64,000 nucleotides of DNA, from positions 15,996,001 through 16,060,000 of the forward strand of contig NC_079167.1 of NCBI RefSeq assembly GCF_947568905.1. Reading direction: 5' to 3'. The notes under the pieces are model-generated. The model did no database searches. It was given only the letters and a program-made list of their open reading frames with translations, and was not told the origin of the DNA. Position numbers and translations under genes: made by a program. This stretch comes from Ostrea edulis. Its lineage: Eukaryota. Of the stretch, positions 19,101 through 58,783 are shown in pieces. Positions within the stretch are counted from its first letter, which is position 1. Each line of letters begins with the position of its first letter.

Positions 19101-22100
19101 ATGCCGGGGAAGAGGAAAAGAGGGGTTAAAAACCCTTTCCGACATACTAGTAGTAAGTGGTGCCCAGAATTTTGCACAGCATCAAATTAAGCTACATGTA
19201 ACACTCGGTCAAACTTTATTCAGTTGGACTAGTTCTGAAGTACTAAACTTATATCGTATGTTATACTGTTGAGGTCAAAGGAATTATCTGTCTCTCTAGG
19301 AAAAACAAGGCTACGAATGTTAAAATGAATATGTAGATATTTGAAGTACCATAGATTCAAGAATGTTTGTTTTGAACAATTGTATTTTATTCAATTTGAT
19401 TAAATCAAAAGGACTGGGTACAAGTTCTAACAACTTACTAGTCCCTTTCAAAAGATATTACAATTTATCAGGCAAGATAATAATTAAAAGGTAAAAAAAA
19501 GTTTGTTCATATGCGAAATCATAAAAAACAAATGTACAACTACCGTTTTACATGTACCACAGGTGACTGAACCCCCTTCAAACCTCTGGATTGTTTTGAG
19601 TTCTTTTGGGGGTGTCATAATAAATTATTTAAAAAAAAAAATTTAAACACGTTTTACAGAAATACTATTTATAAAAAATAAATCAAACAACCCACTGAGG
19701 TTTAATGGAGAGGAGGACCAGTATCCAAGCACCTGTGTATTTAACGTCGATATCTTATAAACAGTTAGTCATAATGCTTTATCTTATACCGTGGTAAGGA
19801 GTCTCGTTGTTAAGGTCGATCTGCCTGGGTAGATGTTCAAAATACATTATTTTACACTGAAATAGATCTATATCGGATATAGAAATGTCATTGTATGTTT
19901 GGGACAGTCTAGCATGGTGTACCTGAAGGTACACAAGTAATTCGGGGGGGGGGGGGGTAATGGGGCCTTTAAACGGGGTTCAAAGTTTTTGAGATTGTTT
20001 CTCACTGGGAGTATGTCGCGAGGGTGAGGTTCTGGTCTTCCAGTGATATGATTATAAAGAACTGAAATTATCATCGTGAAAAAAAAACAAGGCTGACCCC
20101 GAGACATGATTTTCAAATGAAGAGCTAAGTACAAATACATGTCCGAGGTTTTTTATTGGTTTTTTTTTTCACGGAGATGCACTATGTAAGGTTATATAAT
20201 GCAAGCCTTTTTTGGCCCCCATTAACTACACCCCCACCACCAAGCTTTAAAGAAACTAACTTTTAGTTCATAAAGAGAACCATGTTCATTATAGTTCCAC
20301 GGTATTATATTGTTTGTTTCTTACTAATATTTATGATGTCATTATTCTGAATTCAGATCAAAATAAGAATTTTAGCATCTAGATTCTTGCACAAACAATA
20401 TGTAATTTGGAAGGAAAAGCATGACAATGATTGGGAGGGGGAGGGGTGTGGTGTTCTCCTCAAAGTTGAGACGATTACAAAATTGTTTGTCATAAATATT
20501 AATCAGAAAGTGTTAATCAGCATTTTTCATCTTTAAAATAAATATACAAGGCTGTGAGTAGTCTTCAAAAGAAAAGAACAAACCTTTAACCTTTGCTAGG
20601 TTTTATAGAGATCTACTTATCAGTGTGCCAATATGAAACACGTCAGAAAACGTCAGACAAAGCTCGCCTTTCTTTGGTACCAAGATTTTTGACCTTGGTC
20701 TTTGACCTACTGTTCAAAAACTTCAAGGTAGATCGATCCTCGTGTGCTGTCATAGCTTTTTGTAAAAATCTTTATTAAATAAACTTCGCGCATGATAGAA
20801 ACAAATCTTCCAGAGGAATGTTATTCATTGGATAAAACAAAAATTCTGGCAAACTATTGATAGTGAAAAAGTTTATATTTTCCATAGATAATTAAAAAGA
20901 TATTATCAAAGGCAATAACTCCTATGCTGGTATTTCCTCTACACTATGTCTATTATACAATATTTTCCCTAATATCCACAATTAATTTATATACATATCT
21001 ATAAATAAGCAGTTTTTCTAAACCGTTGATATTAAGAATTTGTCATTTTAACAATGTTTTATCAATTCTTATTATTCTGTTTTACTAAAATGTCTGATTT
21101 TCCTATGTTGATCTACATGTATACTTCTGTTTCTGACATCTTAAAAAAGGTGGCAACATACATATTTTCTTTCATAATTAATCAAATTAAACTATATTGA
21201 GTGGAACTTTATACAGTTTTCCACTTTCAACCATTAATATTGATAAGTCATATGTTCTGCGTATGATCAGTTTTTAAATCGAAGAAGGCTACTGACAAAG
21301 AAGCTGATGGTGCAGGGTTTCAACAGTCTCGTTTAAAGTCAGCATTTCGCAAATTCTATGATCGTTCTAACAATCTAGTTTGCCAATACAACTTATCATT
21401 GGTTCAAATGTTGTCTGACGTGTTTCATATTGGCACATTGATTTTGACTACGGATAACTCCGTTTACCTGATCAAAATATAGGCTCACGGCAGGTGTGAC
21501 CAGTCTACAGGAGATGCTTACTCCTCCTAGGCACCTGATCCCATCTCTAGTATAGCCAGGGGTCCGTGTTTGCCCAGCTCTCTATTTTGTATTGCTTATA
21601 GGAGTTATGAGATTGATCACTGTTCGTTATCTTCACCTTTCATGAGGATGGAGCTACCTTAACCTTGGCTGTATCTTTTGAACCAAGGGAGATAGGGTAC
21701 TGATATTCCACATGTAAATTTCTCATGACCAGGCCTTTCATTTGGTACCAAGACTCCTAGCTGAATCCATCGTCGGATACCCACGGTCGGTCGCACTCAG
21801 TTTACCTCCCATGGGACACAACGCCGATATTTTCGCATAACTCATTAAAATGCATGACTTTACGTGACCTATCGAGGACCAATGGGAATTGCCGTAAATA
21901 TTACTGGAACTCAAAGTATCAGCAGTAATGGCGGCGCCTATAAAAATGTGTTTGTGTGTTTTGTTGTGTACCACTGTCAAAGATATATATAAAAATCCAG
22001 ATTTGGCACCCCAAAATGGTTGATTATTCAAATTACTGATACATAGTATCTCTACATACCCATATGTACATCACTAATTTAAAAGTACAACCTATAGGAA

Positions 22101-25100
22101 GTTTTCAATTTTAGGAGATAAAATATTGCGCCATGGAAAACATCATATGAATGGATTGATTGATTGATTGTTTCGATGTTTTCCGCCACACTCAACAATT
22201 TTTCAGTTATCTGGTGGCGCCCAGTTTTTTATTGATGGAAGAGAGAACCCAGTTACAATGTACCTCGGAAGAGACCACCGACCTTCCGAAAGTAAACTGG
22301 GAAACTTTCTCACTTACCGACGCGAGCGGGATGCCGGTAAGTGAGAAAGTTTCCCAGTTTACTTTCGTAAGTTTGGTGGTCTCTTCCCAGCGACCTTCCG
22401 AAAGTAAACTGGGATTTTATTTTATGGAATTTACATACTTATACGGTAAGTAATGCAGCACTGATAGTGATACAGAGTTGGTTTAATAGTCAACTAACTT
22501 ATTTGAGTCGAACAGCAGTGTCACCTAATTAATTGCTAGAACCGATCAAAGCTGAAAGTAAATTTCCAGACATGAATTATGAAGGACTGCTCCTAGATTC
22601 GGTGAAGGTGTCAGTCCAAATATTCTGCCGAGCCGAATTTCAACCGAGATTAATTTTCCTCAAATTTAGAAAGCCTTATATAGAGCAAAAATCCAGTGAC
22701 CTTAGCAGTATACTTAGTAAAGTACTAAAGATTATACATGTATTTTGTATTCGGGATATCATGTGAACAAATTTCCATAAACGTAAAACACAACCCTATA
22801 ACATTTCCGATATCAATGTTAAAACAGTTGTTAAAAAAGCAAACTATTCTTCTCAGCAGATACTAATCGGTATCCAGGTCCAATCAAGGGTGCACGGGGA
22901 TTTACTCCGGGCTGCAGTACTCCATAAACCCTGAGGCCGAATGGTGCATGGAATGCAACCCAGAGTAAATGTCTGTACACCATTGATTGTGTCTGGATTA
23001 CGAATTCATTTACTATGTAAGCAAATAAATTTTGTCATCCAGGTCCATTCATGTGTGGTTGACAAATAATACTATCTATTTCCCTGATTTAAAATAGGAT
23101 AATATGTGAGGTATTCTTCGTATTGTACAAGGTGCTTCAAAATAAGCAAAAAGCCAACATCTCTAATCAAGAATCATGAAATCTGCGAAATTCACGATTA
23201 AAGAGATGATGCATTCTGACGTTACAATATTTACACCCCCCCCCCCCGGCTTGAAAAGGATGTATCAAAATTTACTCTTGGTTTGTTAACCAATCAAAAC
23301 TCGTATTACAAGTCACATAGAGAATAAATGTCTCAACTCTTCATACACGACAAAACGTTGGTAGGTTTGAAATCGTGAAATCTCTTTCATAACCTCCACT
23401 TATACATGTACGTAACAAGACGATAATTTTTCTGGTTTTTAGATAGTTGTACAGTAGGATTTGGTTCAAGCCATTCAATGTCTCAGGCGTCTTCACGATG
23501 TAGTTTGCACTGGGAATCGATCTCTGGAGATGAAAACTATAATAGCACTTTCGCCGACTCCGATTCTGAAACAGATCCCGAAAATGAATTTGCTACTTCT
23601 AGATATGAAAAAAGTTGCCAGCTTTATGCTAGTAATGAGGGAAAACGTAGGATTTTGCGGCAAGACATCATGCAGTATGGACTTGAGCTTTCAAATGCAG
23701 ATGACTTCAAAGAAAAGGAAGATAAAAAACCGTTTTATGATGAAATGTTTCCAGTAGACAGCTTAGAAAAGAAATTGAAATCCAATCCACATCAGTATAA
23801 GCGCTGCAGGTTTAATGTTATGAATTCCCATGAATCTGTATGCAAGATTCTCGACCAGCCCGACATAGATGACCTAGAGGAAATTAAAATATCAGGGAGA
23901 TCTAAAGCTGGAAAAGCGTTTGATGGCGACATTGTTCTTGTGGAAGTATACAGTTATAGAAAGTACGGACAGGAATTTATTGGTCGGTATCAGCGGGACA
24001 TTAATAGAAACAACAAATTGCGCAAGATTTATGGCAAAGTAATCGGCATCTTTGAAAGGAAGAGAGCAAAAGACATAACGCACCCGGTTTTTGTCTGTGT
24101 TTTGGACGAAACCTCGAACTTTCTTATGAGACCAGTATGTAAAACTATTCCAAAGCTAAACATTCTCCACAATTTCAAAGATCCAAACGTCATTCTTGTC
24201 CATAAGTACGACCCACAATCTTCCTGTATCAAATTTCAGTATCAATTCAAGATTGATTTGAAAAATATCAGGAACTTCACTTTCCTAGTCGTTTTTCTCA
24301 GATGGACCGATTGTCACCCTTATCCATTAGCTGCAGTCATCAAAGTCGTTAAAATCGAAGAAAGTCGATCATCTGCACTTCAAAATCTTCTACTTCAACA
24401 CCAAGTGCCAAAATACTACCAGGAAGATACTGTCACGGAGACTGAAAGAAAAGTTCAGGAATTTGACCCAGAGGAAGTAAAACGCGACAGAGATAGGGAA
24501 GACTTGACAGCTCTGCAAGTGTTCACCATTGATCCTAGAAATTCGAAAGATCTCGACGATGCATTAAGCATTGAAAAAGTAGGTGAAAACTATCGTATAG
24601 GTGTTCATATTGCGGACGTAGGCGCTGTCATCAGTAAAGGTGATGCGATGGATTTGGAGGCTCAGAATAGAGTCTGTACATTTTACCCTGGAGGAGACAT
24701 CAACCCCTACCACATGTTTCCTGAACCATTCAGCACCGATATATGCAGCTTGCTTCCGGGCGTTCCTAGACCAGCAATTACGGTTTTCTTTACAATGAAC
24801 AAACGAGGGATAATGGTGAAAAATTTTGAAGTAAAGAAAACTGTCGTTAAGTCTTCACAACAATTCACATATGAAGAAGTGCAGAAGATTATAGAGAATG
24901 ATACCCCCAGTGAAAAATTGCATAACGACGTTTTATTGCTGTTCAAATTAGCAATGATGATCCGAATCGCACGAATACAAACAGCTATATTTTCTCTACC
25001 AATTGAAGGTAAGCTGAATGAAACGAAGACATCCTTATCGAGTTCCAGAGAAGCACACTATCTTGTTGAAGAATTCATGATTTTAGCTAATGTAGCTGTT

Positions 25101-28100
25101 GCACAGTTTTTGAAAGGGATATTCCCGGAGGTGGTACCTATGCGTTGTCAGGAGGCACCATCCAGAGAAATGGTAGAAAAATGGATAAATGAAAACAGTC
25201 CAGTCCTTAACATGGTGCTGGGATTGCAAGGCATTCATCCACAAAGAGACCAAGAGAGCATAGGGTTACATCAAATCAGCAATGTCCTGAGATACATATA
25301 TGTCATGCCAATTCAGAAATGGGTGTTTAAAATGATGATGGAGTGTTTTAGCAACAACGATCTGGATAAAATAGAAAAGCTCATTTGCACAGATGAACTT
25401 CATCCAATGCAATGCTTGGCTTTAGAAGAATGGAAATCATTCCAAGAAACTGCTTTCTACAAATGTAGCAGTGCAACCAGAGCGTCAGAGGAAATGATCC
25501 ATTTCTCGCTGAAAATGAACTTTTATGTACATTTTACATCACCTATTCGAAGATATCCTGATGTAGTAATCAATCGACTTGTTCATGCAGCTCTGGAAAA
25601 TACAGAAAGTCCTTATTCAGCTGAGGATGTGACAGATATTTGTGAAGGATGCAATAAAGGCATTCGGAGAGCAAAACTATTCCAAAAACAATGTCAAATG
25701 ATGATTTGGGGATTTCAGTTGAAAAAGACGCCTAAAGTCTTACATGCCATTGTCAGAGAACTCGCAGACAAATCAGTATCAATAGTAATTCCTGGTTTAA
25801 GATCGCTGCCAGTCTATTGCAAAGAGCTACCATTGAATCTACTACAATTGTCTGAAAAGCCGAAAACTACAACTCGCCACGAACATGAATATTTAGAACT
25901 CCAATGGATAAAACGACTTTATGATGTGACGGGAAAACCGAAGGCAAGTTGGAAAAGGTTATCATATAGGGAAAAAGAAACATTCTGTAAAAAGATTAAT
26001 CCAAACTTAAAATCAAAATTCATCAAGCAGGAAACTTGGAAGGTGTTTTTATCGGGAGTCATCAAACATAAACTACCGGAGCTACGAGAATATCTGCTTG
26101 CTGGTGGTTTGGAGGACTTGTGTTTGGACAGAGACGGGTATAATTATGTTGACGGGTGTCATGAAACAGTGTTTGATCACAGCTCTGAAGTCGAAAGTGG
26201 AAACGTTATCAAACAAGGATGTGAATATAGTATGACATTCACAAGAGGGCAAATCGTTTGCGTTCAGCTTTCGGCAGAACCACAGAAGGGAATACTTTCT
26301 CCGTCACTGCAGTTGTACGATATGACTGCAAGCATCAAGTATTGTCTTCAGCATACTCGTGACCCGATCAAATTTCTCTCCACATATTCCTCTCTGAAAC
26401 CATACAAAACGTATTCTTCTCCAAAGAAATATTTAAGTACATGGCTGCCGCTGATGGAAATGGAGGCAGTAACGTCTGCAATAGATGATGATTCAGTTTC
26501 CATCAATAATGTTCAAGTCACGTTTGATTCAAAACGTTCAGGGTATTTTATTATACCGCAAAGCTTTACCGATCAAAGAGATATAGACTTCAATGTCATA
26601 TCCGAAAGACTTGTCATAAGAGGAGAAGATGAAACTGATCGACAAGAATATCGTAATTCTAGTTTTCTTTGCATTCGGTCGGAACACGTCCTCAGAAAAC
26701 CTGTTGAAACAAGGCAATATTCATTGTCAAATGATCCGAGTGATAGAATCTATTATATACTTCATGCACGAATTACTATTGTTGAAAAGTTGAAAAATAT
26801 GCCAAATTCAGGATCAGATGAGGAAGTGCGGAAAAAGACCAGGAATGTTTTGAAAGTTAAATTTAAACTACACCCTGAGAGCAGTGATCCCAGTGATGAG
26901 ATGTACTACAATTATAATCCTTCGCCCTGTACTGTAGAAATCATTGCAAAATCTGAAACAGACACGTAAGCAGTATTTGAATGCCAAATAAGAAAAAAAA
27001 AGAAGACCAACGTGNNNNNNNNNNNNNNNNNNNNNNNNNNNNNNNNNNNNNNNNNNNNNNNNNNNNNNNNNNNNNNNNNNNNNNNNNNNNNNNNNNNNNN
27101 NNNNNNNNNNNNNNNNNNNNNNNNNNNNNNNNNNNNNNNNNNNNNNNNNNNNNNNNNNNNNNNNNNNNNNNNNNATTGTAGACGCACCGAGGTTATTCTG
27201 GGATGCCTTAGTCTATCGACAGACGTGGCCAAGATGATTGCCCTCAATAAAAGAGGCACCATACGTTTAAGTTTGTAAAATTCTGTATTTGTTTGTCAAT
27301 CGGTTTTTAATAATTTGTTTTGGCCAATCAATAAATTCATCTCTTTGGTCTATAACAGATACAACATACATTGAAATAGCTTCGAAAATTAACATTGAAG
27401 TGAAAATACCAAAGGTAGTACCAAACAACGAATTCCAGAAAAAAGCAATAAAGAACGCTCTGACTTCAACATTTAGTCTCATCCACGGACCACCTGGTGA
27501 GTTATACAGGTAACACCAAACTAGATAACCAGCAAATTGCTGGAGAAAATTAGTCTACTTCATATGGTATTTTAGAATGAGCTACGTTGTGCTAAATACT
27601 TACAGGAGAGAACGTTTATATGCATCATTTGTCTCTTTCTTTTCATTTGTATTTTATTACTGCTTATCAAGAATGGAACGTGTTTCAGACGAAGATGTTG
27701 GATAGATGTGCTAGCTGTTCTGTCATGCAAGATCTGCCATACGTATAATGATATTTTCTTCACCTAAAGGTACAGGAAAAACTCACACAGGTATTAAACT
27801 GGTTTACCTATTCGACAAAATCAACACTAAAATGCAAGAAGAAGGTTATGCAAGAACGCATGTCGTGTTTTGTGGACCGAACAACAAGTCTGTGGATCTG
27901 GTGGCACGTACGTGTTTTTTTTTTACATGCCTTAGAATTAGATAAATGCCTTTAGAATTATCGTTGACACTTGGTATGGACATGATCATAATTGAAAGTG
28001 TAGGTCAGTTTTTATTAATGTAAGGTGAATATAACGAACAGTGATCAATCTCACAACTCCTATAAGCATGTTGTCTGAGTGTTAAAAACGATCAAATAAA

Positions 28101-31095
28101 AATGATTACCTTAGGTCTTGAAAGGACTACTTTTTGTACTTAGAACAGACAACAGTCCTGTTGTTTGTTTAATTTTGTTTGTTACTTAGGCGACCAGTAA
28201 GACAATGGGCGTCTTGTTACTTTTACAGGATGGATGCTTCAAACCTATGGCAAAGAGTGCCCAGATATTGTTCGACTTTATGGCAGTTCTCTTGAAAACA
28301 AAGTATTCCCAACACTTGGTAAATATTTTTCCAAAAGAGCATCTGCAAAAGAATCCAAACCGGATCCAGCGTTGGAAGAAATATCTGTACATAATTTAAT
28401 ACGGTTGGAGGACAAACCATATTCTGAAGATGTAGGTAGATTTGACCAATTGTTTCGCAAGTATGATTCAAACGAATACGAACCCACTCTGAAAGACTTG
28501 AAAAAGTACAGAAAATTGATAAGCGAAGCAACAAAGACGGAAATCAAACACCACCACGTTATTTTCTGCACAACGTCGGTCGCGACAAGTCCAAGATTTA
28601 TAAAAGCCCTCAGTGGTAATATTCAGCAGTTGATCATAGACGAGGCAGGAATGTGCACTGAACCAGAGAGTATTGCGGCAATCATATCTACCAAAGCGAA
28701 ACAAATTGTTCTAATCGGCGATCACAAACAACTTCAGCCAGTGTTGAAGTCCTCCTATGCAGCAGAATTAGGTCTAGAAAGATCTTTATTTGAAAGATAT
28801 TCGGATCGCGCAACTATGCTTCAAATTCAATACCGTATGGTATGTAATGCTGTATTGAATAAATGTTTTCAAACGTATTTAGGAAAGAGAGGGTTAGAGA
28901 TGGGGAATCTCCGCCAAGTACCCCATCCCATCGATTTGTGAGTACATGTATATAATTTTCAGATGTTATCTGTCTTGTCTTTTGATTATATGTTACAAAC
29001 TGAGGAATGTAACCCACCCCACTATCTAAATCTATTCCGCAAACTTTGATCTCTTATTGGCAGTCACTTTTGGTGAAAATTTTATTTAAAATACTCCCGA
29101 AAGGAAATACAAATAAACCTTGGCGGAGGAAACTGAAATGTATTTATTGAAAATTATTTTGGTGTTTATGAATTACAGCATCCAAAAATCTGTGAGTTTC
29201 CATCGATTCAGTTTTACGACGGAAAGCTTCAGACGGAATCTTCACCAAAGTGGAATATTCCAAAACCTTTGAAATTGTGGATCAATAGAGAAAAGACACC
29301 ACTTGTGTTTTGTCACATAGAAGGAGAGGAAGAATTTCTTACGGTTTCAACTTTGGAAGGAAATGAACAATCGTGTAGTAATAAACAAGAGGTAGAACAA
29401 GTGGTGAGCAGAATCTAGAAAATCTGTAGTATTAAAATCTGTAATATTGTTTGAAATGTATAACCACTTCTAACCTGCAGCAAGATTTATAATGTTAGTA
29501 AGGAAAACGGTACTTCAGCTCAATGACAGAACTTTCGTTTAAAGTCCTAAAGGGTGTGACAAGTCCTCACATACTCCACATCGAAAGTGATATGAGAAAA
29601 CTCGTGTTTACTATATAAGTAATGAATCGTATTTGGTAGGTGTTTTGTATAAATGTAAACTTTTGCTTTAAAGTTTTAAAATCATTATGCATTTTACATT
29701 GTAATTTTTATGCTGAATAATTAAGGAACCTCAATACACCAACAGGCTATACGTTTTAAAGAGCCAGAATATTGTACCTTTTAAAGTTATACAATGTCGA
29801 TATAGAAGACATTCATATCATTGTCATTATAGCGCACTAGGCTTCCTAAAATACCCCAGAAAATGAAAAAAAATATAATCAGAAAATTGTGAGATAAGAG
29901 GGAAAACTTGCTTTGTTGCATTAAACTAATAAATTAGACATGCATGTTTAAGGCGTTATGACGTCATGAATTTCTTCATTTCACTTGTACTATGTCATTT
30001 TGACTTAAAATCTGCAATGTTTGCAACACTTGACAATCTATCTAAGCACCTTCACCAAGAAGGCGATGCTTTAAAATTATTTTTTCTTGACTAGGGCTGG
30101 ACTTCAGTTTTACATGAGAATATAAAGGACAATTGAAAAAAAAATCCGTTCAAGAGTAGGACGGCCACACTACATTATATCAATATACAAACATTCCCAA
30201 GTTATGTGAATCCATTTTATGGACCCTTGAGTTCAGTTAGGGTCAAATTTTACATGATACATGAATACAGGGTGAAATCTTGAATATCGTTCAAAGAAAT
30301 CTACTAAGACTAGCAAGGTCGTTTTAGTCATATGGAATTCAAGCATCCCATGCTGTGTGTATTCAATTTTGGTAAAATCATAACCCATGGGGATAGTTAC
30401 ATGTAGAGGTATACTATGGAGTCAAAATGTGTCATGGGGTAAAAACCTGGAAAAAAATAGCAAGGCCAAGGTGACCCAGATGAGCGTTGTGGCCCATGAG
30501 CTTCTTGTTTAGATGTACCCTTTAGACTTGAATTTTGGCTTAATTGTTTAGATCTACCAATCTAAAGATCTCTACTTCATTGGATTTTGAACAAATATAG
30601 TATTGGGTTTGCTTCATTTTCATATTAGATCTGACGGTATTTGGAGTTTTTAAAGCTAAGATATCTAACAATGGAATCACAAAATTTCATTTTGATCTGA
30701 AAACTCAAAATGTTCTGGGCCATGTTCTTTCTACAGTTTTGAACTATTTGATGTACATGTATCTTTAATTTTATAAACATACCGATAATGTACATGTACA
30801 TTATAGATATAGTTATGAAATGAATATAGATATACAAAAGCCTTGCCAAACAAAGTCATATTATTTTTGTGATCAGCAAAACTTGTCCCTGTGAAAAGTG
30901 ACTTTGCTGAAATATTTCCCAGGCTTTCTAGTCTAGAATTAATGTTTTGACAGATACTTTATAATTCTGACCCTCTAAAACGAATAACATATTTTTAGAC
31001 GTTGTGCACATTAGACTACCCTCCACCACAAAATGTATTCAAACTTCCTTTTACGCGTATATATTTATATCTATTGGAAATAATCCGATGATAAA

Positions 31096-31151
<56 letters not shown>

Positions 31152-32849: not shown

Positions 32850-33700
32850 GCTCCCGGAAATTTTTTCGGGGGAGCATATAGTCGCCATCATGTCTGCCCG
32901 TCCATCCGAGCTTATATCACCTAAACCTTTTATTAGAAATTGATCATAAATACCAGTATTCCTTGGGACAGGTGCTTTTGGACCAACATCATTATGGAAA
33001 AGGTCATGATCACTCAGAACACATACCTTATATAGGAAATGGTTCCTTATTTCAACAGATATTGATCATATATCACACAAAGAAGTAACAGGCAATTGGC
33101 TTTCAGACAAAGGACACTCAAGTTCATTTTGTACGGCCATGATCACTCAGAACATATCCATTATATATGAATTTTTTTTTATTTCAACAATATTTCTACA
33201 GTTATTGATCTCTGTGACCAAGGTCTGTGAATGTCATTTTGGAAAGGTCAAGGTCACTCAGAACATATACCCTTTACTTCAGCAGTATTTCAACAAATTG
33301 ATCACATCACACAAAAAAGTAATGACCAAATGGCTTTCAGACAAAGGTCACTCAAGGTCATTTCATAAAGATCGAGGTCACTCAGAACATATATATGAAG
33401 AAAACCTTTATTTCAACAATATATCAATATATTGATCTTTTGGACCAAGGTTATTGCAAGGTAATTTTGGAAAGATCAAGATCACTCAGAACATATGCCT
33501 TGTATGAGGAAAAGGTTATTTAATTCAACAGTTTTTAGAGTTACATGTATTGATCATATATCACACAAATAAGTAAAAGATAAATGGCTTTCAAACAAAG
33601 TTCATTCAATGTCATTTTGTAAAGGTAAACGTCACTAAACATATACCTTATATGAGAAAAACTTTATTGCAATAATATTTTAACAGTTATTGATTGTGCG
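32850..33700. mobile_element. Helentron/HINE-like element with ~6 degenerate ~120-bp internal repeats
   Basis: A tatgctccc...ggggagcata inverted head, then repeated aaggtca.g.tcactcagaacatat at ~33001, 33138, 33245, 33372, 33473 and 33621. Confidence 0.55.
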
Positions 33701-40300: not shown

Positions 40301-41354
40301 ATATTGAAATAGGAGAGGTTCATTATGACTATGGCTCATAGTGAATCAGGAGACCGAGTGCCTGCCCCATTGACCATTGACATACTTATTTTCATTTTTA
40401 TCTACTAATTTGCATTAAATTATTTGAAATACTTAAATAAATTAGCAATTTCAATCTAGAAAATATTAAAGAACATTGGTATTTAATAGCATCGAGACAT
40501 TTATTTTACAATGCTTCATTAATGACTATGACTATGGCCGTGTCATAGTGAATCAGGAGACCGAGTGCCCCCCCCCCCCTCCAATATTAACTTTGAGTAA
40601 TCATAACAAAATACATACTTGTGAATCAATTCCCCCTCCTCCAAGGGACCAATATTTTGTATGCATTCATAATAAGCTGTTCCTATAACCAATCTGTTGA
40701 GACAGTTTGCCACAACAAAACCTTCGTGATCTGTGATGCAGGACACGCCCACTTCTTCAATCCTATGCACTGCAACATTTGGACTCCCTTCTTGAGGGCA
40801 TTGCGATGACATTACTAGCCTATATGATCACCTGTTAGAATAATAGAAAACTAGTCTTAGAAATACATGCTGATGCACTTCTGAGCTTTGAGTAATCGTT
40901 TCATTTTCATTAAAAGTCTCATATAAATAATTAGCCTAAATTAACAAACCATTGCATATCGACCTCGCATATCAGATGGTGAACAGGTGAAGGGCATTCG
41001 TCCGATTGATCCTCGCTGTTTTCTGAATAACTATCGTTTTCCACTAGTGGGGATGCGTCTCGCTGTACAACTGGTTCGTATTGGCAGGGCTGCACATTAA
41101 CACTAAGCGATATATCTATTTCAGGAATACAATCTTCCGAATGATTTTCATATCGTGCCGCCATATTGAAATATCAGGTTCGCCTAAAGGGCAGATAACT
41201 CATACAATAAAATTTACCAGGTTGAAATTAACGATGTCGTATCTACCTGGATGATCGAAACAAAAATTATTCTTATGTGAAAACATTTAAGGAATGGTAT
41301 TTTCTTACGGAATTTATTTGAAAAACGAACTTTGAAAATCGTTTCAGTTGACCT
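37342..41354. mobile_element. Kolobok-type DNA transposon, internally deleted; THAP-transposase start on + and KolX (P2X7 C-terminus-like) relic on -
   Basis: Perfect 16-bp TIR aggtcaactgaaacga with TTAA on both flanks (37338-41, 41355-58). MVFCAVPDCK (THAP start, ~37590) reads inward. The minus strand has QPCQYEP (ORF 40931..41164) and CITDHEGF..CLN....TAYY (ORF 40543..40812). No DDE core was found. Confidence 0.8.
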
Positions 41355-48100: not shown

Positions 48101-51100
48101 ATGTTCACATTCTTTGGATTTAGAATCAACAACAGCCTTCATGCCAGAGGCAGCAAATTTGTCAAAATTTATACATGTAAATGTCATTTGTTGTTAACTT
48201 ACCTGGCGGTCCATGGATAAGACTGAAACTATTGGTTAATGAATTCTTCATGGCCTCTGTTTGAAATACATTATTTGGTTCGATGCCGGGCAAATCTATT
48301 TCAATTTCAAGATCATTAACCTTGTCCAAGTACATTTCCCCTGCAAAACCAAAACCAAAGTGGTGTTCTTTGAAACTCCTTGTAATACCAAGATTTAAAA
48401 TACAATATCATTATTTAATTTCCTTCAATTTAATTTGAGTTTACATATATAATAGTCTTTTGTTATCAGTTTTCGTAATTACCTAATCTTGGTGTTTTTT
48501 CCCCCAATGCAATTGCTTGTGCTAACTTGCTCGATTTCCCAAGACATTTCAAAACAGCCTCCATCCGACTACAAATACGGAACAAACACGAGATATAGCA
48601 ATTTCACTGATATTATAAAGCGATACAAAGAACTAAATTTTATCATTATTGCTGATCATATTTATCCAGACGCCAAGGGGCCACAACGCTCACCTGAAGT
48701 GCAGATTCAGATTTTATGAAAACATGAAATCTGGGGTCAGGATGGGGCCAGAATATGGATGCAGAATAATGCATTGGAATAGAGAGGAGAGTTTTTCATT
48801 TTGAATCCTTTCAAAGACAATAAATAAACAATATCATCACGTAGTACGAATTAAAGTTTTGTTTACAAGGCACCTGCAGTTTGGTTTGTTCAACAATAAA
48901 GATTTACATAGAAATATGAAGAACAAAATTCTCGAGATCAGCTTAGACGATATCAAATAATAGTTTCATGTGCTGAATAAAATTGAGGTTACAATATCTG
49001 TCCTGAATATTCTTGAATATAGCTTTTAAAAGATGTTTTTCCTTTATATATTTTGAACCACCGCGGTGGTCTAAAGGTAGAGCGTTCGCCCCGCATGCGG
49101 GAGGCCGGGGTTCAAATCCCAGCCGTGACAGACCTAAGTCGTGAAAACAGGTAGTGACAGTTCCATCGCCAAACGCTCAGCATCAGGTGTGAATGTCATG
49201 AGTCCTCGGTGATGACCTTAAAACGGATATTCCGTGACACGCTAAAGAACCCTCACTGCCCAATGGCCGTAAGCGCCGATCAAAGGACTAGATTTGAAGC
49301 CCTTCATCGGTCTCTGTGACGTCTCCATTTGAGTGAAAAATTCTTGAGAGAGACGTTAAACAAGATACAATCCATTCAAGAAAATTAGGCTCTTCATTAG
49401 AACAAACATGAATTCCCATTAACTTATGATGCATTTGTGTTTTAATGAAATGGGCACAATGATTCGGGAGATAAAGTAAAAAAGATATACGAAAAGCTGA
49501 CTACAATGTTTTTTAGGTGGACATGCAATTTTGATAAGAAAAGTTTAGATGAGCTTTCAATGCAGGAGGTAAAATAATATGCATAATATTCAAACTTTGA
49601 AAAACTGACTTGGTAAAACAGAAACTTGTATATTACGTATCAGTTTCCGATTTTTGCACAAGTTCTATGCAGCTAGGGTATCCATTTTCTGCGGATAACA
49701 TCTCAGTCATTGCTTCGCTGCTTTCCCTGTGAAGTTTAAAATGGACTTTGTACTTATCAATAACAGTTCGCTTCTTTTCATTGACCTCTGTTTTCATCTC
49801 CTCTGCAACTTTTCGTTCAGGTTTGGGTTTCGTCATTTTCTCTATGTGGTGGATTTGTCCATGAAGGACCCACTGAAATCTGTAATTTGGGTCTATATCT
49901 GACGGTTTCCTTATTTCGTTAGAGTTACTGATAGAATGCTCAGATCTTATGCATAGGAAATCAGAGTTTGTAATGATTTCATTTTTGTTATCTTCATCAC
50001 CGACAAGAATGAAATGGGTCGATATTGTACTAAAATCAATGTCCCTTTGTTCACAAAAATAATGAGCAAGAATGAAATGTCCTCTGTTTGGCGACTCCAT
50101 GAAAATACTCACTCCGTTAATAATCGGAGAATCACTATGAGCTGCATTTGTAACAGCTTCCATTTCGATTATTGGCAACCAAATTTGCAGATATTCAATA
50201 GCTGAAGAAAATTTACATTTTGATTTGCTTATTGAATATTTAGACAAGAACTTAATTGGATCGCGACTGTGTTGCAAGCAGTGCTTAATGTTTTTTGTCA
50301 TATCAAGCAACTGCAAGGATGGGACAAGGACCCCTTTCTGTGGTTCAGCTGTAATTTGCGCGCAAACTACTTGTCCACGAGAAAAGGACATAGAAAATCG
50401 ACATGCTTGACGAATCACTTCTCCATCTTCAACTTCAGACGAATGATCTAATACTGTATCCTTACAGGCGGGCACATAGTTGTGAAGATCTTCATCCATT
50501 TCTTCTTTATCTCTCGATTTCATATTCTTTTGCGGTTGTGAAATAGATTTTTTCAGATCTTGGTGTTTCCCATCAAGCATTGACTTAAGTAATCCTTTCC
50601 ATCGCTCCTGATGCACAAATTTCGTTCTGGCGTGAGGATTTATTCGTTTGCAAACTTCTTTCCTAGCCTCTTCTGACAACCAGTGCAATCTCTGTGCTTT
50701 ACGATCATCTCTGCTCGGCTTGCCCGATACATCATACACGCGTAATAACCAATTCAGTGTCATTATGAGTTCTCCAGTTGTAGTATCTTTTTCAAATTTT
50801 GGCCTCTCGTTTACGTGAAGAAGATTCAGCTCAAACTCTTTGCAAAACTGAGGAAGAGTTCGAAGTCCGGGTAAAACCAAAGACACAGCTCTGTCCGAAA
50901 CTTCCCGAACAAATCCTTGAAGGATCTGTGGGGATTGCTTTAATCTAAATCCCCAGGTAAGCATTCTACATTCTTTTTGAAAAGCCTTTGCTCTCCGAAT
51001 TACATCGTTCAAGTTTTGACATAGAGTGTCAACTTCAAATTCTGAATATGGACATTTTTGATTATCTATTGCAGCATGAAGAAGACGATGAACAATAATG

Positions 51101-54100
51101 TCTGGATATCTTCTTATTGGTGATGTGAAATGTACATACATCTTTCGCTGCAATGAGAAGTGCATTCCTTCCCTTGGCTCATTTAAAGTCCCACTACATC
51201 TGTACGAAGCACTTTCCTGGAAAGATATCCACTCCTCTAATGCCAAACACTGGTTTGGGTGCAGTTCGTCAGTACATATATATTGAATTGCTGACTGAAT
51301 ATCACCTGACTTTAGTGAATCGAGTATATTTTGCCAGACCCACTTTTGGACAGGCATGATCCTTGTATACCTAAGAGGCGTAATAGAATTCAATGTAATC
51401 TTCTCACCTCCCATTCCTGCGCTTGGATCAATATTCTGAAGGCGAAGCACCATGTGAAAGAAAGGATGATTTTGGTCTTTCCACTTTTTGAGAATTTCCA
51501 AAGAGGGTGCAGGTTGACAACGAAGAGGCATCACCTTTGGAAATCGACTATTTAGATATGCAGCAACCGATGTATTTGCTAATACCATGAACTCTTCAAC
51601 AAGGTAATGAGCTTCTCTTGAATTTAGTACCGAGTCTGCATTGTCATTTAATTTTACCTCCACAGGAAAGGAGTGAAAACCTGCACCTGGTCTTTTTTCC
51701 CGTATTGTTTTTGCTATCTCAAAGAGTTGAAGTATGTCTTCCTCCAAGGCACTCTCTGGACGTCTTCTTTCTATTATTTTTTGCACTTCCTCGTATGTAA
51801 ATTTCCTACAAGATTTAACTTTGGATTTTTTCAAACGTTGATTTTCCACGTGACCGTTTTTTGTCATTCTGTATATAACAGACAATGTAGGTCTCATTAC
51901 TCCTGGAATTAAACTACAGATATTTCGTGACAGTGGTTCGGGGAGCATGTGATAAGGATTCATTCCTTGGCCAGGATAAAATGTACAAGCTCTTTCTTTG
52001 GCTTCTAAGTCAAGTTGGTCATCTTTCTTCACTACAACAGTTACATCAGCAATATGAACCCCTATTTCAAACTTGCCATCTACTTCTTCTATGCTGATAG
52101 CATCATCAAGGTCTTGAGATCCTTCTGGGTCAATAGTAAAGACCCTGAGGTGAGATAGATCCTCGCGATTATCTTCGCTCGTGATTTGGCTTGATCCTAA
52201 TTCATCAAGTAGTTTCTTTGTATACTCAACCGTGTCTTTCTGATAGTATTGTGGTACTTGATGGTGAAGGCGAAGGATTTTCATTGCAGAAGAGAAACTT
52301 TCCTCAACTTCAATAACATCTATCACAGCACCCATTGGATACAAGCTAGACCAAGACAAATAAACGACCAAAAACACGAAGCTTGATTTTCTACCGGGGT
52401 CGATTCGAAATTCATAGTTAGGTTCGATATTTGATGACCTTGTGTTATATTTGTACACCTGAATTATGTATTTTTTCCGTCTGTCCTGATCAAGGTGAAG
52501 CTTTGGAACCGTTCTACAGACAGGTCGCATCAGGTAATTTGCGGTGTCGTCCAAAGTACAAACGAAAACAGGGTGATCAATATTTCTAGCTTTCTTTCTT
52601 TCAAAGACTCCAATAATTTTGCCATAAATTTTCTGCGAACGGTTGTCCTTATTGATGTCTTTCTGTAATCTCTGAATGACAGTTTTTGTAAACTTTTCAA
52701 AGTTAAATATCTCTACTAATACTATGTCGCCATCAAATACCTTTCCTGCCTTTGATCTTCCTGATATTTCAATTTCTTTGAGCTCATCGTGAACATCAAG
52801 GTTTAAACACCGTGCTATGTGCGCTCCTTGAATTGTAACTTTGCAACGTTTGTATCGTTGTGTATTTGATTGAAGTCTTCTTTCTAATTGGTCAACTGGC
52901 AAAAATTCGTCATAAAAACCCCGCTTCTTATCAATTTCGCTACTTTCGGGTAAGTTCAAACCATATTTCATCATATCTTGTTGCAATAAATTCTCATCCT
53001 CATTTTCTTCGTTTTCATAATTAGCACAGCTTTCTTCAAATTTTGATTTTTCGCTGTCTTCTTGTGGAATCACAAAACTTCTACGTTTGAACTGAAAATC
53101 ATCTAAGTCTTCGTTGTCAGTCTCAGAGACTCCATCCTCTAATTCAGTTTTGTCGCTGCATGACTCCAGTTCTTCCATATCGGTAGAAACATTGTCACTT
53201 TCATTGTTCTCCTTATCAACCTGACAGGGAATATCTACACAGGACTGTGCATGTGATGATTGAAATAAAGAGGAAAATGAGCGCCCTTCAATGAGTGACG
53301 CATTGCAAGAAATGTCCGGAACACTGTCCGATCTTTGTAAATTTTGTTCGTCATTCCTGTCTGGTATATGTTCTTCTCTCGGGAATTCTACAAAATATGA
53401 AGAAAAGCTCGATCGGGCAAAAAGTTATAATGCTAGTTGGTGTTGTGAAATAAAAGACCTATAACTCTGAATTTTGCAGCACAATTTAGGAAACTTTAAC
53501 ATGAGGTATATATTCTTAATGCAGCAGAATATTCATACTTAAACTTTGATTCCCTATTCAAGCCAACCCTAGTCAAATATGAATATGCAATACAATGGAA
53601 TGTTTGGATATCAATATATTGAATCAGTGGTCCTAGATGAAAAATATCAAAGATTACATATATTGTAATGTAAAACTTTGATCCCTATTGACGTCCCATC
53701 CTACCCCCAAGCCATGGTGTGAAGATAATTGAATCTGTAGTACCTAGGGATGCGTGCATGATAATGATGACAAGTCATGACCCTATTGGTCTTGAGAAGA
53801 ACACCAAAAGTACATTTTATTTGCAATTCTATACAGAATAAGACCGATTGTTTTTCGTTCAAAGGTTAAACTTCATTGGCAAAAATTCACTACCGACTCT
53901 TGCATCAAAACTAATTCAAGCGTCAAATGAGCCATCAGAGTGTATTGCTTACTATGAAATCATAGGATACAATTTACTCAGAGCACCACATTCTTATTTT
54001 TTCGAATAAAGGCCCAATTTGATTTGCACGGGTCAAATTACCCCCGATGCAACTTCCTATGTATGTAAATCATTATGATATAGAAATGTTTGCTGACGAT

Positions 54101-56170: not shown

Positions 56171-56222
<52 letters not shown>

Positions 56223-56899: not shown

Positions 56900-56950
<51 letters not shown>

Positions 56951-58783
56951 TACAAATCAATTTATGTTAAATGTGCTAAAAGTACTGTTTTAATCTAATA
57001 AAGCCTCGGGGAGGAATAGTGTGCTGCACGAATCAGGTCATCTTCACTAAATGAATTATCATCATGATTATATCAGTAATTATCATAAGTATCCAACCGT
57101 GACTCATACTCATATGGTACTCTTTTTTTAATACACTTGTAGGCTGTCTTGGCTACTGGGAGTACAAGACCAACAGTCTGATACAACAATTTATTACCAG
57201 ACTGTTAATAGGCACTGTCCCTTGGTGCTCCCTGTAATCAGGTCAACATATCGTGTTTTGGTTTTTTTTATTCTCTCATATAACGCTATTATTCTCTTTT
57301 ATATAAGTATTCTAACCTTCCTGCTTTATGCATAAAGATTCAGAACAACTGGATCCCACGTCTATATATGTAATATACTTGCATGCTGTATTCAGTAAGA
57401 TGATTTTTAACAGTCGCGGCAATGTGATACTGCAAGTACATGTCTTTGCATTGTACACATTTCCTTTGCTTTACACTTGTAAGCTGTCTTGGTTACTGGG
57501 AGTACAAGATCAACAGTCTGGTACAATAGATTTACTACCAGACTGTTAACAGGCACTGTACCTTGGTGCCCCCTGTAATCAAGTCAACAATTCATACCTT
57601 CTTTAACACTTTGTACAATTGTTTTCATTTATATAATTATTTATTCTAATCTCCCTGCATTAGCATAAAACATTCAGAACAACTGGATCCTACATGTACA
57701 TGTGTTTTATACTTGCATACTGTACTTACTAAAATATAATTATACTGATCTGATTACAATTTTATATCCATTCACACAATACTATCATTATCTGCTGTCC
57801 CAGAAACTGATGTGTGAAGCAGTTGGGTTATTTTATTTATCATGTTGTTAATTTAAATCTTGTCTGTAATCAGTATTTCATATATAATTATAGATGTGTG
57901 CAGTGCAGAAGTGTGAACTCTGTCAGTATTACCGGTAGTACTTCTGAATGATTGTTATTTATTTTCATTGTTATGATTAATTGCTTGTTAACCTGTACAT
58001 GCCCCCCGAGGGCCCTTGATTGTGAATAAACAATAAACATATATTGTATCATGGCTGTGGTGTTTTTCCTTTAATAAAAAGTGTACAATAACTGGAGATA
58101 CACCGGTGGGCGGAACCATCATTTGCATACTTTTGAAAACTGTGCCGTGTAAATAAATTATTGAACACCACCTGACAGTGACAATTTCAACTCAAGGTGA
58201 AGATCAAATCAGAATTCACGAGATTAAGGCCCGCGGCCGTGTCGATATCCATTTTATCATCTCCCGATTTAACTTCACGAAATGTGTGGTCATCACATGC
58301 TTGTGAGAAAACATTGAATAAAAACTGTACATCCAAATCGTGTAAATCGCCAATGTTCATAGTCGAGGTGCTCTGATCAGACGCATTATGCACATCCGCT
58401 CTCACTAACTATCGGGTGATGAGTGCAAGATTGGCATGGATAGCGGGAAGAGGAAAATACCCACGCGATCACCTGACAAAAACTTTACTTTTCATTGGGG
58501 TAATTAAAAAAAAAAATCGTGCAATAACCACTGGTCACATGACAGATATTATATTTCTAATTGGTCATGATACAAGTAAGTTATTGAATATTTATATACT
58601 CGTGCTTCGCACTCGTCACCGCCCTTCGTCCAAATAAATCAAGATACACCGAAATAAATATACAATAACTATTACAAATTACGTGAAATGGTTCTGGGAG
58701 TGTTCCGATATGTGGTGTGACAAGAAAAAATACTCACGGCTCCAGCTTGCCCGCCTCACCCTGGCGTTTCGTTTCCCCGGCAT
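42147..58783 (-). CDS. HELZ2-like: HELZ2-like paralog C, complete RNB exoribonuclease + SF1 helicase (~1849 aa); exons 58783-58738, 53387-49637, 48568-48483, 48340-48203, 48060-47923, 47035-46422, 46273-46052, 45949-45784, 44634-44467, 42367-42147
   Basis: The exon sum is 5550 nt in frame, with the same intron positions and phases as paralog B. Motifs are FTIDPEGSQDLDDAIS, HFTSPIRRYPD, GPPGTGKT, DEAG, GDHKQL, SQGGEWDY and NVALTRAR. The first exon MPGKRNARVRRASWS has a phase-1 donor gtgagt. AATAAA lies at 42079-42074. Confidence 0.88.
49057..49379 (+). mobile_element. tRNA-derived SINE, near full length, in an intron of paralog C
   Basis: A box tggtctaaagg (49067), B box ggttcaaatcc (49109), a ~200-nt non-tRNA body, and a LINE-like 3' end gaaaaattcttgagagagacgttaaac with a short tail. 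Confidence 0.8.
49637..53387 (-). CDS. HELZ2-like: Giant coding exon of paralog C (RNB domain region)
   Basis: ORF 49633..53178 is open back to the acceptor tttgtag (53388) and ends at the donor ac|gtaat (49636). It is collinear with the giant exon of paralog B. Confidence 0.93.
55037..55340 (+). mobile_element. RTE-clade LINE, 3'-terminal fragment
   Basis: It translates, with one frameshift, to WRYLGHVLRM...AIKWTPPGKRQPGR...TWRK...LGYNW..IRRAVHDRSQWRELV, a typical RTE ORF C-terminus. Confidence 0.8.
55849..56900. mobile_element. Fold-back/MITE-like element with ~300-bp imperfect inverted arms
   Basis: 55849-56150 is the diverged reverse complement of 56640-56900, for example ttccggaatg...catgcctaaa versus tttaggcatg...cattccggaa. 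An internal poly(A) lies at 56176-56219. Confidence 0.7.
56900..56947. repeat. (CT)n microsatellite
   Basis: Directly visible. Confidence 0.95.
57134..57730. repeat. Tandem duplication of a ~340-bp unit in intron 1 of paralog C
   Basis: acacttgtaggctgtcttggctactgggagtacaag... at 57134 recurs at ~57473 with high identity. Confidence 0.85.

What the first reader, a model, noticed from the sequence alone, without database searches (positions are those of the whole stretch)
19101..58783. Cluster of half-HELZ2 genes: an intact RNB exoribonuclease fused to a single SF1 helicase, without the zinc finger or first helicase
Seen: paralogs B and C each splice from a ~16-codon MPGKR exon, with in-frame stops upstream, directly into an RNB-bearing exon and then into one Upf1-like helicase. 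The RNB catalytic motif DxxxxxDxDD, HFTSPIRRY and all helicase motifs are intact in both copies despite deep divergence. Established: vertebrate HELZ2 is ZnF-helicase-RNB-helicase, is interferon-stimulated, has 3'-5' exoribonuclease activity and acts against viruses and LINE-1. Inference: this is a lineage-specific minimal nuclease-helicase subfamily, expanded in tandem and inverted copies and kept under selection, and a candidate invertebrate antiviral or anti-retroelement RNA-degradation module.
Basis: partly seen in the sequence, partly recalled or inferred. Interest (0 to 1): 0.72.

Follow-up and report, generated by a model that had tools for sequence, protein, structure and literature searches.

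The report
Oyster single-helicase HELZ2-like nuclease gene cluster
The flat oyster carries a tandem cluster of intact genes that join an RNA-degrading RNB nuclease to one helicase, a trimmed relative of the vertebrate antiviral protein HELZ2; the genes are already annotated, but this shorter build, found across molluscs beside a full-length HELZ2 gene, was not described in the papers I could search.

Summary
The window is Ostrea edulis (C4:15.996-16.060 Mb). Genes B (19101-32706, +) and C (60843-42150, -) encode OB_HELZ2 + RNB + one C-terminal Upf1-like helicase. All RNB and helicase motifs are intact, and there is no zinc finger or first helicase. RefSeq models (XP_048763557.2, XP_048763553.1) map at 100% with GT-AG introns.

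The N gap (27015-27174) lies inside intron 2 of B and removes no coding sequence.

One correction: in C the MPGKR exon is not the first coding exon. Two upstream exons add 70 residues, conserved in Saccostrea, with no recognisable domain.

- A/B/C form an oyster-specific minimal clade under purifying selection (dN/dS about 0.16), inside an 8-gene, 250-kb cluster.
- Lack of helicase 1 is not special to this cluster. All 88 HELZ2-type proteins retrieved without an upstream helicase share it; all the named ones are molluscan except one brittle-star model. Most carry a TPR-like N-terminal domain instead.
- A canonical two-helicase HELZ2 ortholog exists at C4:20.64 Mb, but with its RNB catalytic residues lost.

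I obtained no RNA evidence: the runs found were genomic DNA. An antiviral role remains inference. I rate it a new variant of a known kind, of moderate interest.

The parts
19101..19152 (+). Gene B coding exon 1 (MPGKRKRGVKNPFRHTS, phase-1 donor GTAAGT)
   Evidence: Exact mapping of RefSeq XP_048763557.2 (P0178); sequence. The in-frame TAA lies 10 codons upstream.
23443..26965 (+). Gene B exon 2: acidic linker, OB_HELZ2 (23748-24065), RNB (24495-25598), and a conserved region of about 500 aa without a Pfam model. Catalytic DPRNSKDLDD at 24531-24560, HFTSPIRRY at 25530-25556.
   Evidence: Pfam; mapping; motifs.
27015..27174 (.). Assembly gap inside intron 2 of gene B (intron 26966-27181)
   Evidence: The protein is collinear with paralogs A and C across the junction.
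27182..27270 (+). Gene B exon 3
27359..27496 (+). Gene B exon 4
27770..27907 (+). Gene B exon 5 (motif I GPPGTGKT spans a junction in this part)
28229..28839 (+). Gene B exon 6: helicase motifs Ia, II (IIDEAGM 28633-28653), III (28711-28725), IV (QYRM 28828-28839). An alternative donor at 28937 gives the truncated isoform X2.
29179..29403 (+). Gene B exon 7 (AAA_12 start)
31226..31388 (+). Gene B exon 8
32161..32328 (+). Gene B exon 9 (motif VI VALTRAR 32289-32309)
32603..32709 (+). Gene B exon 10 and TAG stop
60724..60843 (-). Gene C coding exon 1 of RefSeq isoforms X1 and X4 (MAGVFKTLK...), conserved in Saccostrea orthologs
59212..59254 (-). Gene C coding exon 2
58738..58830 (-). Gene C exon 3, holding the internal MPGKRNARVRR (ATG at 58783), phase-1 donor GTGAGT
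49637..53387 (-). Gene C exon 4: OB_HELZ2 (52902-52591), RNB (52167-51064), conserved C-terminal region. DPEGSQDLDD at 52131-52102, HFTSPIRRY at 51132-51106. An alternative acceptor at 53234 is used in isoform X4.
48483..48568 (-). Gene C exon 5
48203..48340 (-). Gene C exon 6
47923..48060 (-). Gene C exon 7
46422..47035 (-). Gene C exon 8: helicase motifs Ia-IV (IIDEAGM 46628-46608)
46052..46273 (-). Gene C exon 9
45784..45949 (-). Gene C exon 10
44467..44634 (-). Gene C exon 11 (motif VI 44506-44486)
42147..42367 (-). Gene C exon 12 and TGA stop
898..6338 (+). Gene A, last five coding exons (898-1508, 1607-1831, 4097-4259, 4371-4538, 6028-6335, then the stop): the helicase of the upstream paralog. 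Its OB/RNB exon lies 5-9 kb before the window.
   Evidence: Mapping of XP_048763556.2 (P0181)

Best explanation
B and C (with A at the window's left edge) are intact protein-coding members of a molluscan paralog family derived from HELZ2. The layout is a short basic and acidic N-terminus, an OB/cold-shock region (OB_HELZ2), a catalytically competent RNB 3'-5' exoribonuclease, a conserved region of about 500 residues, and one Upf1-like SF1 helicase that aligns with HELZ2 helicase 2.

The family split from canonical HELZ2 (zinc fingers, helicase 1, RNB, helicase 2) before bivalves and gastropods diverged, and it lost the N-terminal half. Most members carry a TPR-like N-terminal domain instead. 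The oyster-specific A/B/C clade lost that too, which makes it the minimal form. The genes multiplied by tandem duplication before Ostrea, Saccostrea and Crassostrea separated, and they have been kept under purifying selection.

Mechanism (inferred from human HELZ2 biochemistry): the RNB threads a single-stranded 3' end and degrades it 3'-5', while the ATP-driven 5'-3' helicase removes duplex or protein obstacles, so that structured RNA can be degraded. The biological role is most likely defence against viral or retroelement RNA. I put that part at roughly 50%.
For: Shown here.
- Organism and existing annotation: the best hit is 100% identical to O. edulis RefSeq 'helicase with zinc finger domain 2-like'.
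- Gene models: exact mapping with canonical GT-AG splice sites and full open CDS of 1737 and 1919 codons.
- Domains: Pfam finds OB_HELZ2, RNB, one AAA_11 and one AAA_12, and nothing else.
- Active sites: RNB catalytic residues and all helicase motifs are intact.
- Which helicase: it aligns collinearly with helicase 2 of Pongo and Branchiostoma HELZ2, including the insert between motifs Ia and II that helicase 1 lacks.
- No hidden helicase-1 or zinc-finger exons in 264 kb. The positive control works: the same queries find helicase 1 in hemichordate, amphioxus, vertebrate and sponge HELZ2, and in oyster gene I.
- Family range: 88 proteins have OB+RNB+helicase with no upstream helicase; all the named ones are molluscan except one brittle-star model. 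20 proteins have an upstream helicase; all the named ones are deuterostomes, and a sponge protein (Oscarella) has it too.
- Tree: the molluscan short forms are one clade (SH-aLRT 100). A, B and C each group with orthologs from other oyster genera.
- Selection: A-B dN/dS is 0.16, D-E 0.36, F-G 0.2-0.25.

From the literature. Human HELZ2 is an active RNB exonuclease. Its helicases let it degrade duplex RNA, and helicase 2 is the more active ATPase (PMC10516660). HELZ2 is said to occur in corals and molluscs. 'Helz2' is induced 24 h after OsHV-1 infection in C. gigas (bioRxiv 10.64898/2026.05.15.723513).
Against: There is no direct RNA evidence for O. edulis. The only runs found that hold the exon were genomic DNA contigs, and the Logan-derived protein fragments all end at exon borders. 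Expression therefore rests on RefSeq's multi-isoform models.

No enzymatic or infection data exist for any short-form protein. The C. gigas 'Helz2' in the preprint is not tied to a particular paralog. ISRE-like motifs are enriched in the window (6 against 0.96 expected), but none lies within 1 kb upstream of the first exon of B or C.

Human data suggest that the two helicases cooperate, so a one-helicase enzyme may behave differently. The protein lists were cut at 120 rows, so absence of short forms outside molluscs is not shown. A brittle-star model (P0225) also has one helicase.

The tree is a 'quick' search with long outgroup branches.
Confidence: 0.78

Rival explanations
1. The short architecture is an annotation or reading artefact. 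On this reading the real transcripts carry further 5' exons with zinc fingers and a first helicase, as in vertebrate HELZ2.
For: N gaps lie upstream of B at 18134-18346 and 9886-10034. No RNA reads were obtained.
Against: tblastn with six canonical N-terminal halves hits only the known helicase-2 and OB exons across 264 kb. The same approach readily finds helicase-1 exons at gene I. The MPGKRK N-terminus is conserved in Crassostrea, Saccostrea and Ostrea models. The extension in C is 70 residues without a domain. A 213-base gap cannot hide a helicase of about 500 residues.
Confidence: 0.03
2. B and C are decaying duplicates (pseudogenes or unexpressed copies) of a functional family member.
For: There are many tandem copies. 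B has an isoform (X2) truncated by an alternative donor. Four other paralogs in the genome have lost the RNB active site. There is no RNA evidence here.
Against: The CDS of 1737 and 1919 codons have no stops in a 35% GC genome, and all splice sites are canonical. All catalytic motifs are kept. dN/dS is 0.09-0.23 in every domain. One-to-one orthologs are retained in other oyster genera.
Confidence: 0.03
3. The proteins are real single-helicase RNB nucleases, but they work in ordinary RNA turnover or cell-type-specific gene regulation rather than in defence.
For: Purifying selection with no sign of dN/dS above 1 in any domain. No ISRE-like site in the proximal upstream regions. In a deep-sea mussel, 'helz2' was reported as a hub gene of bacteriocyte development (PMC13401447). 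Mouse HELZ2 also has metabolic phenotypes.
Against: Repeated lineage-specific tandem expansion with deep divergence is typical of defence genes (inference). Vertebrate HELZ2 is interferon-induced and restricts LINE-1. 'Helz2' rises after OsHV-1 infection in C. gigas.
Confidence: 0.3
4. Read-through or conjoined transcripts across tandem neighbours (helicase of A joined to the RNB and helicase of B) rebuild a helicase-RNB-helicase protein.
For: A and B lie head-to-tail on the same strand, about 12.7 kb apart.
Against: A ends in a stop codon. RefSeq predicts no such form. The spacer holds repeats and two gaps. C is inverted, so it cannot take part.
Confidence: 0.02

Closest known systems
Vertebrate HELZ2 (PRIC285), interferon-induced 3'-5' exoribonuclease
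   Same: OB_HELZ2 + RNB + conserved C-terminal region + Upf1-like helicase 2, collinear over the whole C-terminal two thirds. The RNB catalytic residues are present; in fact all four Asp are kept, whereas the primate protein has Asn at the second.
   Different: No N-terminal zinc fingers and no helicase 1. Proteins of 1737-1919 aa against about 2650-2950 aa. About 12 genes per genome instead of one. No activity or induction data.
Canonical HELZ2 ortholog of O. edulis itself (gene I, C4:20.634-20.649 Mb)
   Same: Same family and same big-exon structure (OB+RNB in one open exon of about 1350 codons), with helicase 2 downstream.
   Different: Gene I keeps the N-terminal region and helicase 1 (41-52% identical to Branchiostoma HELZ2) and groups with deuterostome HELZ2. 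It has lost DxxxxxDxDD and the RR of SPIRRY. B and C show the reverse pattern.
Molluscan long-form HELZ2-like proteins (for example neighbours D and E, XP_048757563.2; scallop, mussel, clam and gastropod proteins of 2100-2670 aa)
   Same: Same clade and the same OB-RNB-region-helicase 2 core without helicase 1.
   Different: They carry an N-terminal TPR-like helical domain of about 255 residues, which A, B and C lack.
DIS3L2, DIS3/Rrp44 and RNase R (RNB exonucleases with solved structures)
   Same: These are the closest solved RNB domains (E about 1e-36 to 1e-34), with the same catalytic motifs.
   Different: None is fused to a helicase. They also differ in their N-terminal CSD/PIN arrangement and have no OB_HELZ2-type domain.
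UPF1 and other Upf1-like SF1 helicases (SEN1, IGHMBP2, ZNFX1, MOV10)
   Same: UPF1 is the closest solved helicase (E 2e-48). All SF1 motifs are shared.
   Different: No nuclease is fused in those proteins, and their accessory domains differ.

Membership tests
HELZ2 family (3'-5' exoribonuclease HELZ2) | RNB domain preceded by the HELZ2-type OB fold (Pfam PF25049) | tested here: met
   B: OB_HELZ2 E 2.7e-16, RNB 3.7e-70. C: OB_HELZ2 7.6e-15, RNB 6.5e-77. All are above the curated cut-offs.
HELZ2 family (3'-5' exoribonuclease HELZ2) | C-terminal Upf1-like helicase (helicase 2) after the RNB | tested here: met
   AAA_11 and AAA_12 at residues 1245-1705 (B) and 1391-1849 (C). They align collinearly with helicase 2 of Pongo and Branchiostoma HELZ2.
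HELZ2 family (3'-5' exoribonuclease HELZ2) | N-terminal Upf1-like helicase (helicase 1) before the RNB | tested here: not met
   No Pfam helicase lies before the OB domain. phmmer and tblastn are negative, although they detect helicase 1 in canonical proteins and in gene I.
HELZ2 family (3'-5' exoribonuclease HELZ2) | N-terminal zinc fingers | tested here: not met
   No Pfam family in residues 1-240 of C or in the N-terminus of B. The N-termini are 110-240 residues of basic, then acidic and Ser-rich sequence.
HELZ2 family (3'-5' exoribonuclease HELZ2) | Descent from the HELZ2 lineage rather than from DIS3, DIS3L2 or RNase R | tested here: met
   All close relatives carry PF25049 and are named HELZ2-like, while DIS3 and RNase R score far lower. 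The tree joins the molluscan forms with canonical HELZ2 (quick search).
HELZ2 family (3'-5' exoribonuclease HELZ2) | Induction by interferon or viral infection | not testable with these tools
   No RNA runs were found. The only indirect datum is a C. gigas preprint.
RNB (RNase II/R) exoribonucleases, active members | Four acidic residues of motif I (DxxxxxDxDD), the Asp of HIADV, and the Arg of the SPIRRY motif | tested here: met
   All are present in A-H, including B and C. They are absent in paralogs I-L.
RNB (RNase II/R) exoribonucleases, active members | 3'-5' exonuclease activity | not testable with these tools
   Needs a recombinant protein assay.
Upf1-like SF1 helicases | Motifs I (GPPGTGKT), Ia, II (DEAG), III, IV (QYRMH), V and VI (VALTRAR) | tested here: met
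   Alignment. The closest solved chain is UPF1, E 2e-48.

The most novel reading that the evidence does not exclude
Molluscs may have split the two jobs of HELZ2 between genes. The canonical two-helicase ortholog (gene I) has given up nuclease catalysis. A separately expanded single-helicase family keeps an active RNB, and the oyster A/B/C clade is its stripped-down effector. On this reading the short forms would be virus- or retroelement-induced RNA degraders of an interferon-less antiviral system, with the catalytically dead paralogs (I, J, K, L) acting as sensors, scaffolds or regulators.
Probability: 0.25. Interest if true: 0.7.

Novelty: new variant of a known kind. Interest (0 to 1): 0.48.

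Why it matters
HELZ2 is a recently recognised interferon-induced nuclease-helicase that acts against viruses and LINE-1, and how its two helicases and its nuclease divide the work is not settled. Molluscs offer a natural dissection of that question.
- A family of enzymes has the nuclease plus helicase 2 only.
- Some members add a TPR-like head, and some have nothing in its place.
- They sit beside a full-length gene whose nuclease looks dead.

This gives testable minimal constructs for the biochemistry. It also gives paralog-specific markers for oyster antiviral responses (OsHV-1, Bonamia), which matter for aquaculture. The genes themselves are already in RefSeq, so what is new is the architecture and the evolutionary reading, not the discovery of the genes.

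Tried and rejected
- RNA evidence. The look-up of sequencing runs on the B exon listed no run on record as RNA. The four best holders, laid on 18400-24399, were genomic DNA: their contigs run straight through intron 1. Nothing could therefore be learned about splicing, transcript starts or expression, and both tools were then at their caps.
- Logan-derived protein fragments in the RefSeq clusters all end at exon borders, so they are genomic too.
- ISRE-like motif GAAANNGAAAC: 6 in the window against 0.96 expected, but none lies near the starts of B or C. It is not used as evidence.
- Pfam on intergenic open frames (10368-13060, 7673-8128, 33010-33432, 40546-40827) gave nothing above cut-off. 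A sub-threshold Toxin_trans hit at 33010-33432 is taken as chance.
- Rfam on the whole window: no match. Tandem repeats and tRNAs in B intron 1: none.
- ESM Atlas search: it returned only HELZ2-like clusters without taxa.
- Literature: eight searches found no paper on the single-helicase architecture or on molluscan HELZ2 paralogs. One of them was badly posed and uninformative.
I used coordinate-only genome searches instead.
- I did not run the large representative-protein search. The claims made here do not rest on absence of relatives.
- B-C synonymous sites are saturated, so no dN/dS is given for that pair.

Full report
**What the window is.** The large RNB exon of gene B is 100% identical to Ostrea edulis RefSeq protein XP_048763558.2, 'helicase with zinc finger domain 2-like isoform X2'. 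The window is G000:C4:15996001-16060000 of an 895-Mb assembly. The genes in the finding are therefore already predicted and named in a public annotation.

**Checking the observation.** Six-frame scanning shows two very long open frames, 23427-26966 (+) and 49636-53424 (-). Helicase-bearing frames lie downstream of each, and a third set lies at 732-6335.
- Pfam places OB_HELZ2 (PF25049) and RNB in each long frame, and AAA_11/AAA_12 in the downstream frames.
- The MPGKR codons are at 19101 (+) and 58783 (-), as reported. Their GTAAGT and GTGAGT donors are in phase 1 and fit the acceptors at 23442 and 53388.
- I mapped the RefSeq proteins exactly onto the DNA. B (XP_048763557.2, 1737 aa) has 10 coding exons from 19101 to 32706. 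C (XP_048763553.1, 1919 aa) has 12 coding exons from 60843 down to 42150. A (XP_048763556.2, 1842 aa) contributes its last five exons (898-6335). Its RNB exon lies before the window.
- Every intron is GT-AG, and the three CDS are open throughout.
- On the full proteins Pfam finds one OB_HELZ2, one RNB and one AAA_11/AAA_12 pair, and no zinc finger.
- The RNB residues are all present: DxxxxxDxDD, the Asp of HIADV, and HFTSPIRRY. So are helicase motifs I-VI.

**The assembly gap.** The N run 27015-27174 lies wholly inside intron 2 of B (26966-27181). The donor GTAAGC lies 49 bases before it, and the acceptor (attgtag) ends 7 bases after it. Exon 3 has the same length (89 nt) as in gene A. The protein reads ...KSETDT|RTEVILGCL..., collinear with A and C. 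No coding sequence is lost. The real intron length and the branch-point region are unknown.

In C the MPGKR Met is internal.
- The exon is 93 nt (58830-58738), and its acceptor lies between the genomic in-frame stop and the ATG.
- Two further coding exons lie upstream (59254-59212 and 60843-60724).
- All four RefSeq isoforms start upstream of MPGKR.
- The 70-residue extension (MAGVFKTLK...GSDD...SDNEW.KDSNQ...) is conserved in both Saccostrea orthologs, so it is probably real coding sequence. It has no Pfam domain.
- For B, and for the A-type orthologs in Crassostrea and Saccostrea, the models do start at MPG(K/R)RK.

**Is a first helicase hidden?** I fetched the flanks and assembled 264 kb (C4:15.976-16.240 Mb).
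- The stretch holds eight genes, A-H. Each has its own RNB exon followed by its own helicase exons. All are on the + strand except C.
- tblastn with the N-terminal halves (zinc fingers plus helicase 1) of HELZ2 from a hemichordate, amphioxus, a sponge, a primate, a gecko and a fish hit only the known helicase-2 exons and OB regions.
- The method is sensitive. The same kind of query detects helicase 1 in all canonical proteins. Run against the whole O. edulis genome, it finds a clear N-terminal region plus helicase 1 at one other place, C4:20633766-20639480 (41-52% identity, E down to 9e-71).
- There Pfam shows AAA_11/AAA_12 in the exon just upstream of a 1348-codon exon. The end of AAA_12 sits at the start of that exon, which goes on to OB_HELZ2 and RNB. 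Helicase-2 exons follow.
- The oyster therefore has a canonical two-helicase HELZ2 ortholog (gene I) as well as the short forms.

**The family.** The genome has 12 OB_HELZ2 exons, all open for 1116-1349 codons. Eight are in the cluster (A-H), gene I is at C4:20.64 Mb, and three (J, K, L) are at C1:107.66-107.74 Mb.
- Database searches returned HELZ2-like proteins from many bivalves and gastropods, 1600-2670 aa long.
- Among proteins in hand with OB+RNB, 88 have a downstream helicase and no upstream one. 53 of these have at least 300 residues before the OB. All the named ones are molluscan, except a brittle-star model (P0225).
- 20 have an upstream helicase. All the named ones are deuterostomes. 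Three further canonical proteins, from the sponge Oscarella and two fish, were not counted only because the OB query missed them.
- Because a sponge and deuterostomes share the two-helicase layout, that layout is the older one, and the molluscan form is derived.
- In place of helicase 1, the long molluscan forms share an N-terminal domain of about 255 residues (jackhmmer). AlphaFold models it with confidence as an all-helical repeat (mean pLDDT 80.7, above 90 for residues 10-250). Its best Foldseek matches are all TPR proteins, though weak. It is not a decayed RecA fold.
- A, B, C and their orthologs lack this domain.

**Tree and selection.** A quick maximum-likelihood tree of 61 OB-RNB cores was built.
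- It puts all molluscan short forms in one clade (SH-aLRT 100).
- Gene I falls with Ptychodera, Branchiostoma and Amphiura. These are long branches, but the grouping agrees with gene I's architecture.
- A, B and C resolve into three groups, each with orthologs in Saccostrea and/or Crassostrea. The duplications are therefore older than the split of these oyster genera. D/E is a recent pair (96% identity).
- dN/dS is 0.16 for A-B (0.09 in the helicase, 0.23 in the RNB), 0.36 for D-E and about 0.2-0.25 for F-G. B-C synonymous sites are saturated.
- This supports 'kept under selection' and gives no sign of pervasive positive selection at this coarse level.

**An unexpected pattern.** A-H keep every RNB catalytic residue. 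The canonical gene I and the three C1 paralogs have lost the acidic cluster and the RR of SPIRRY, yet they retain long open exons. In this genome, nuclease competence is thus found only in the single-helicase cluster to which B and C belong.

**Mechanism (inferred).** Human HELZ2 is a 3'-5' RNB exonuclease. Its helicases give ATP-dependent passage through duplex RNA when the complementary strand has a 5' overhang, and helicase 2 is the more active ATPase (PMC10516660). B and C retain exactly the RNB plus helicase-2 half, so the same coupled unwinding and degradation is the most likely activity.

A defence role is plausible for three reasons: the tandem expansion, the known role of the vertebrate relative, and a preprint that reports 'Helz2' induction 24 h after OsHV-1 infection in C. 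gigas. None of this was tested for these genes. The attempt to get RNA evidence failed, because the runs that hold the exon are genomic DNA.

**Novelty.** Huntzinger et al. state only that HELZ2 occurs in some corals and molluscs. In eight literature searches I found no description of the single-helicase family, its TPR-like variant, the minimal oyster clade, or the coexisting nuclease-dead canonical gene. The genes themselves are annotated. I therefore class this as a new variant of a known kind, of moderate interest.

Noticed in passing
G000:C4:20633766-20648598 (+), outside the window; part held as L036: A canonical two-helicase HELZ2 ortholog (gene I). N-terminal region and helicase-1 exons lie directly upstream of, and run into, a 1348-codon OB_HELZ2+RNB exon, with helicase-2 exons downstream. 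Its RNB has lost DxxxxxDxDD and the RR of SPIRRY, so it is probably nuclease-dead.
   Followed up: partly
G000:C1:107.66-107.74 Mb (L033, L034, L035): Three further single-helicase paralogs (J, K, L) have open RNB exons of 1137-1227 codons but lack the RNB catalytic residues. They form their own clade.
   Followed up: partly
Beyond the window's right end: genes D (about 69.6-79.5 kb in window numbering) and E (about 106.3-117.2 kb): These near-identical neighbours (96% identity, dS 0.058) encode 2104-2114-aa forms with a confidently modelled TPR-like N-terminal helical domain. The domain is conserved in long forms of bivalves and gastropods and absent from A, B and C.
   Followed up: partly
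window 20800-22800 (intron 1 of gene B): A very high-copy interspersed repeat. The summed contig depth in four DNA runs rises from under 100 to between 10^5 and 10^7, with many rearranged joints. No tandem array or tRNA is present.
   Followed up: partly
window 28839 and 28937: Alternative donor in B exon 6. Use of 28937 (RefSeq isoform X2) shifts the frame and ends the protein at 1580 aa, without the second RecA half of the helicase.
   Followed up: partly
window 53234 and 53387: Alternative acceptor in the big exon of C. Isoform X4 skips 51 codons of the acidic N-terminal linker.
   Followed up: no
G000:C4:61561708-61568326 (-): A second locus similar to HELZ2 helicase 1 (38-60% identity to Branchiostoma residues 393-812), with TAG stops inside three of the six matched pieces. 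It may be a pseudogene or a related helicase.
   Followed up: no
window 10368-13060 (+): A run of open frames of 95-155 codons between genes A and B looks like a decayed mobile element, but none matches a Pfam family.
   Followed up: partly
window 39223, 40898, 43757, 43776 and others: The ISRE-like motif GAAANNGAAAC occurs 6 times against 0.96 expected. The sites lie in the B-C intergenic space, in one exon and in C's last intron, not in the proximal promoters.
   Followed up: no
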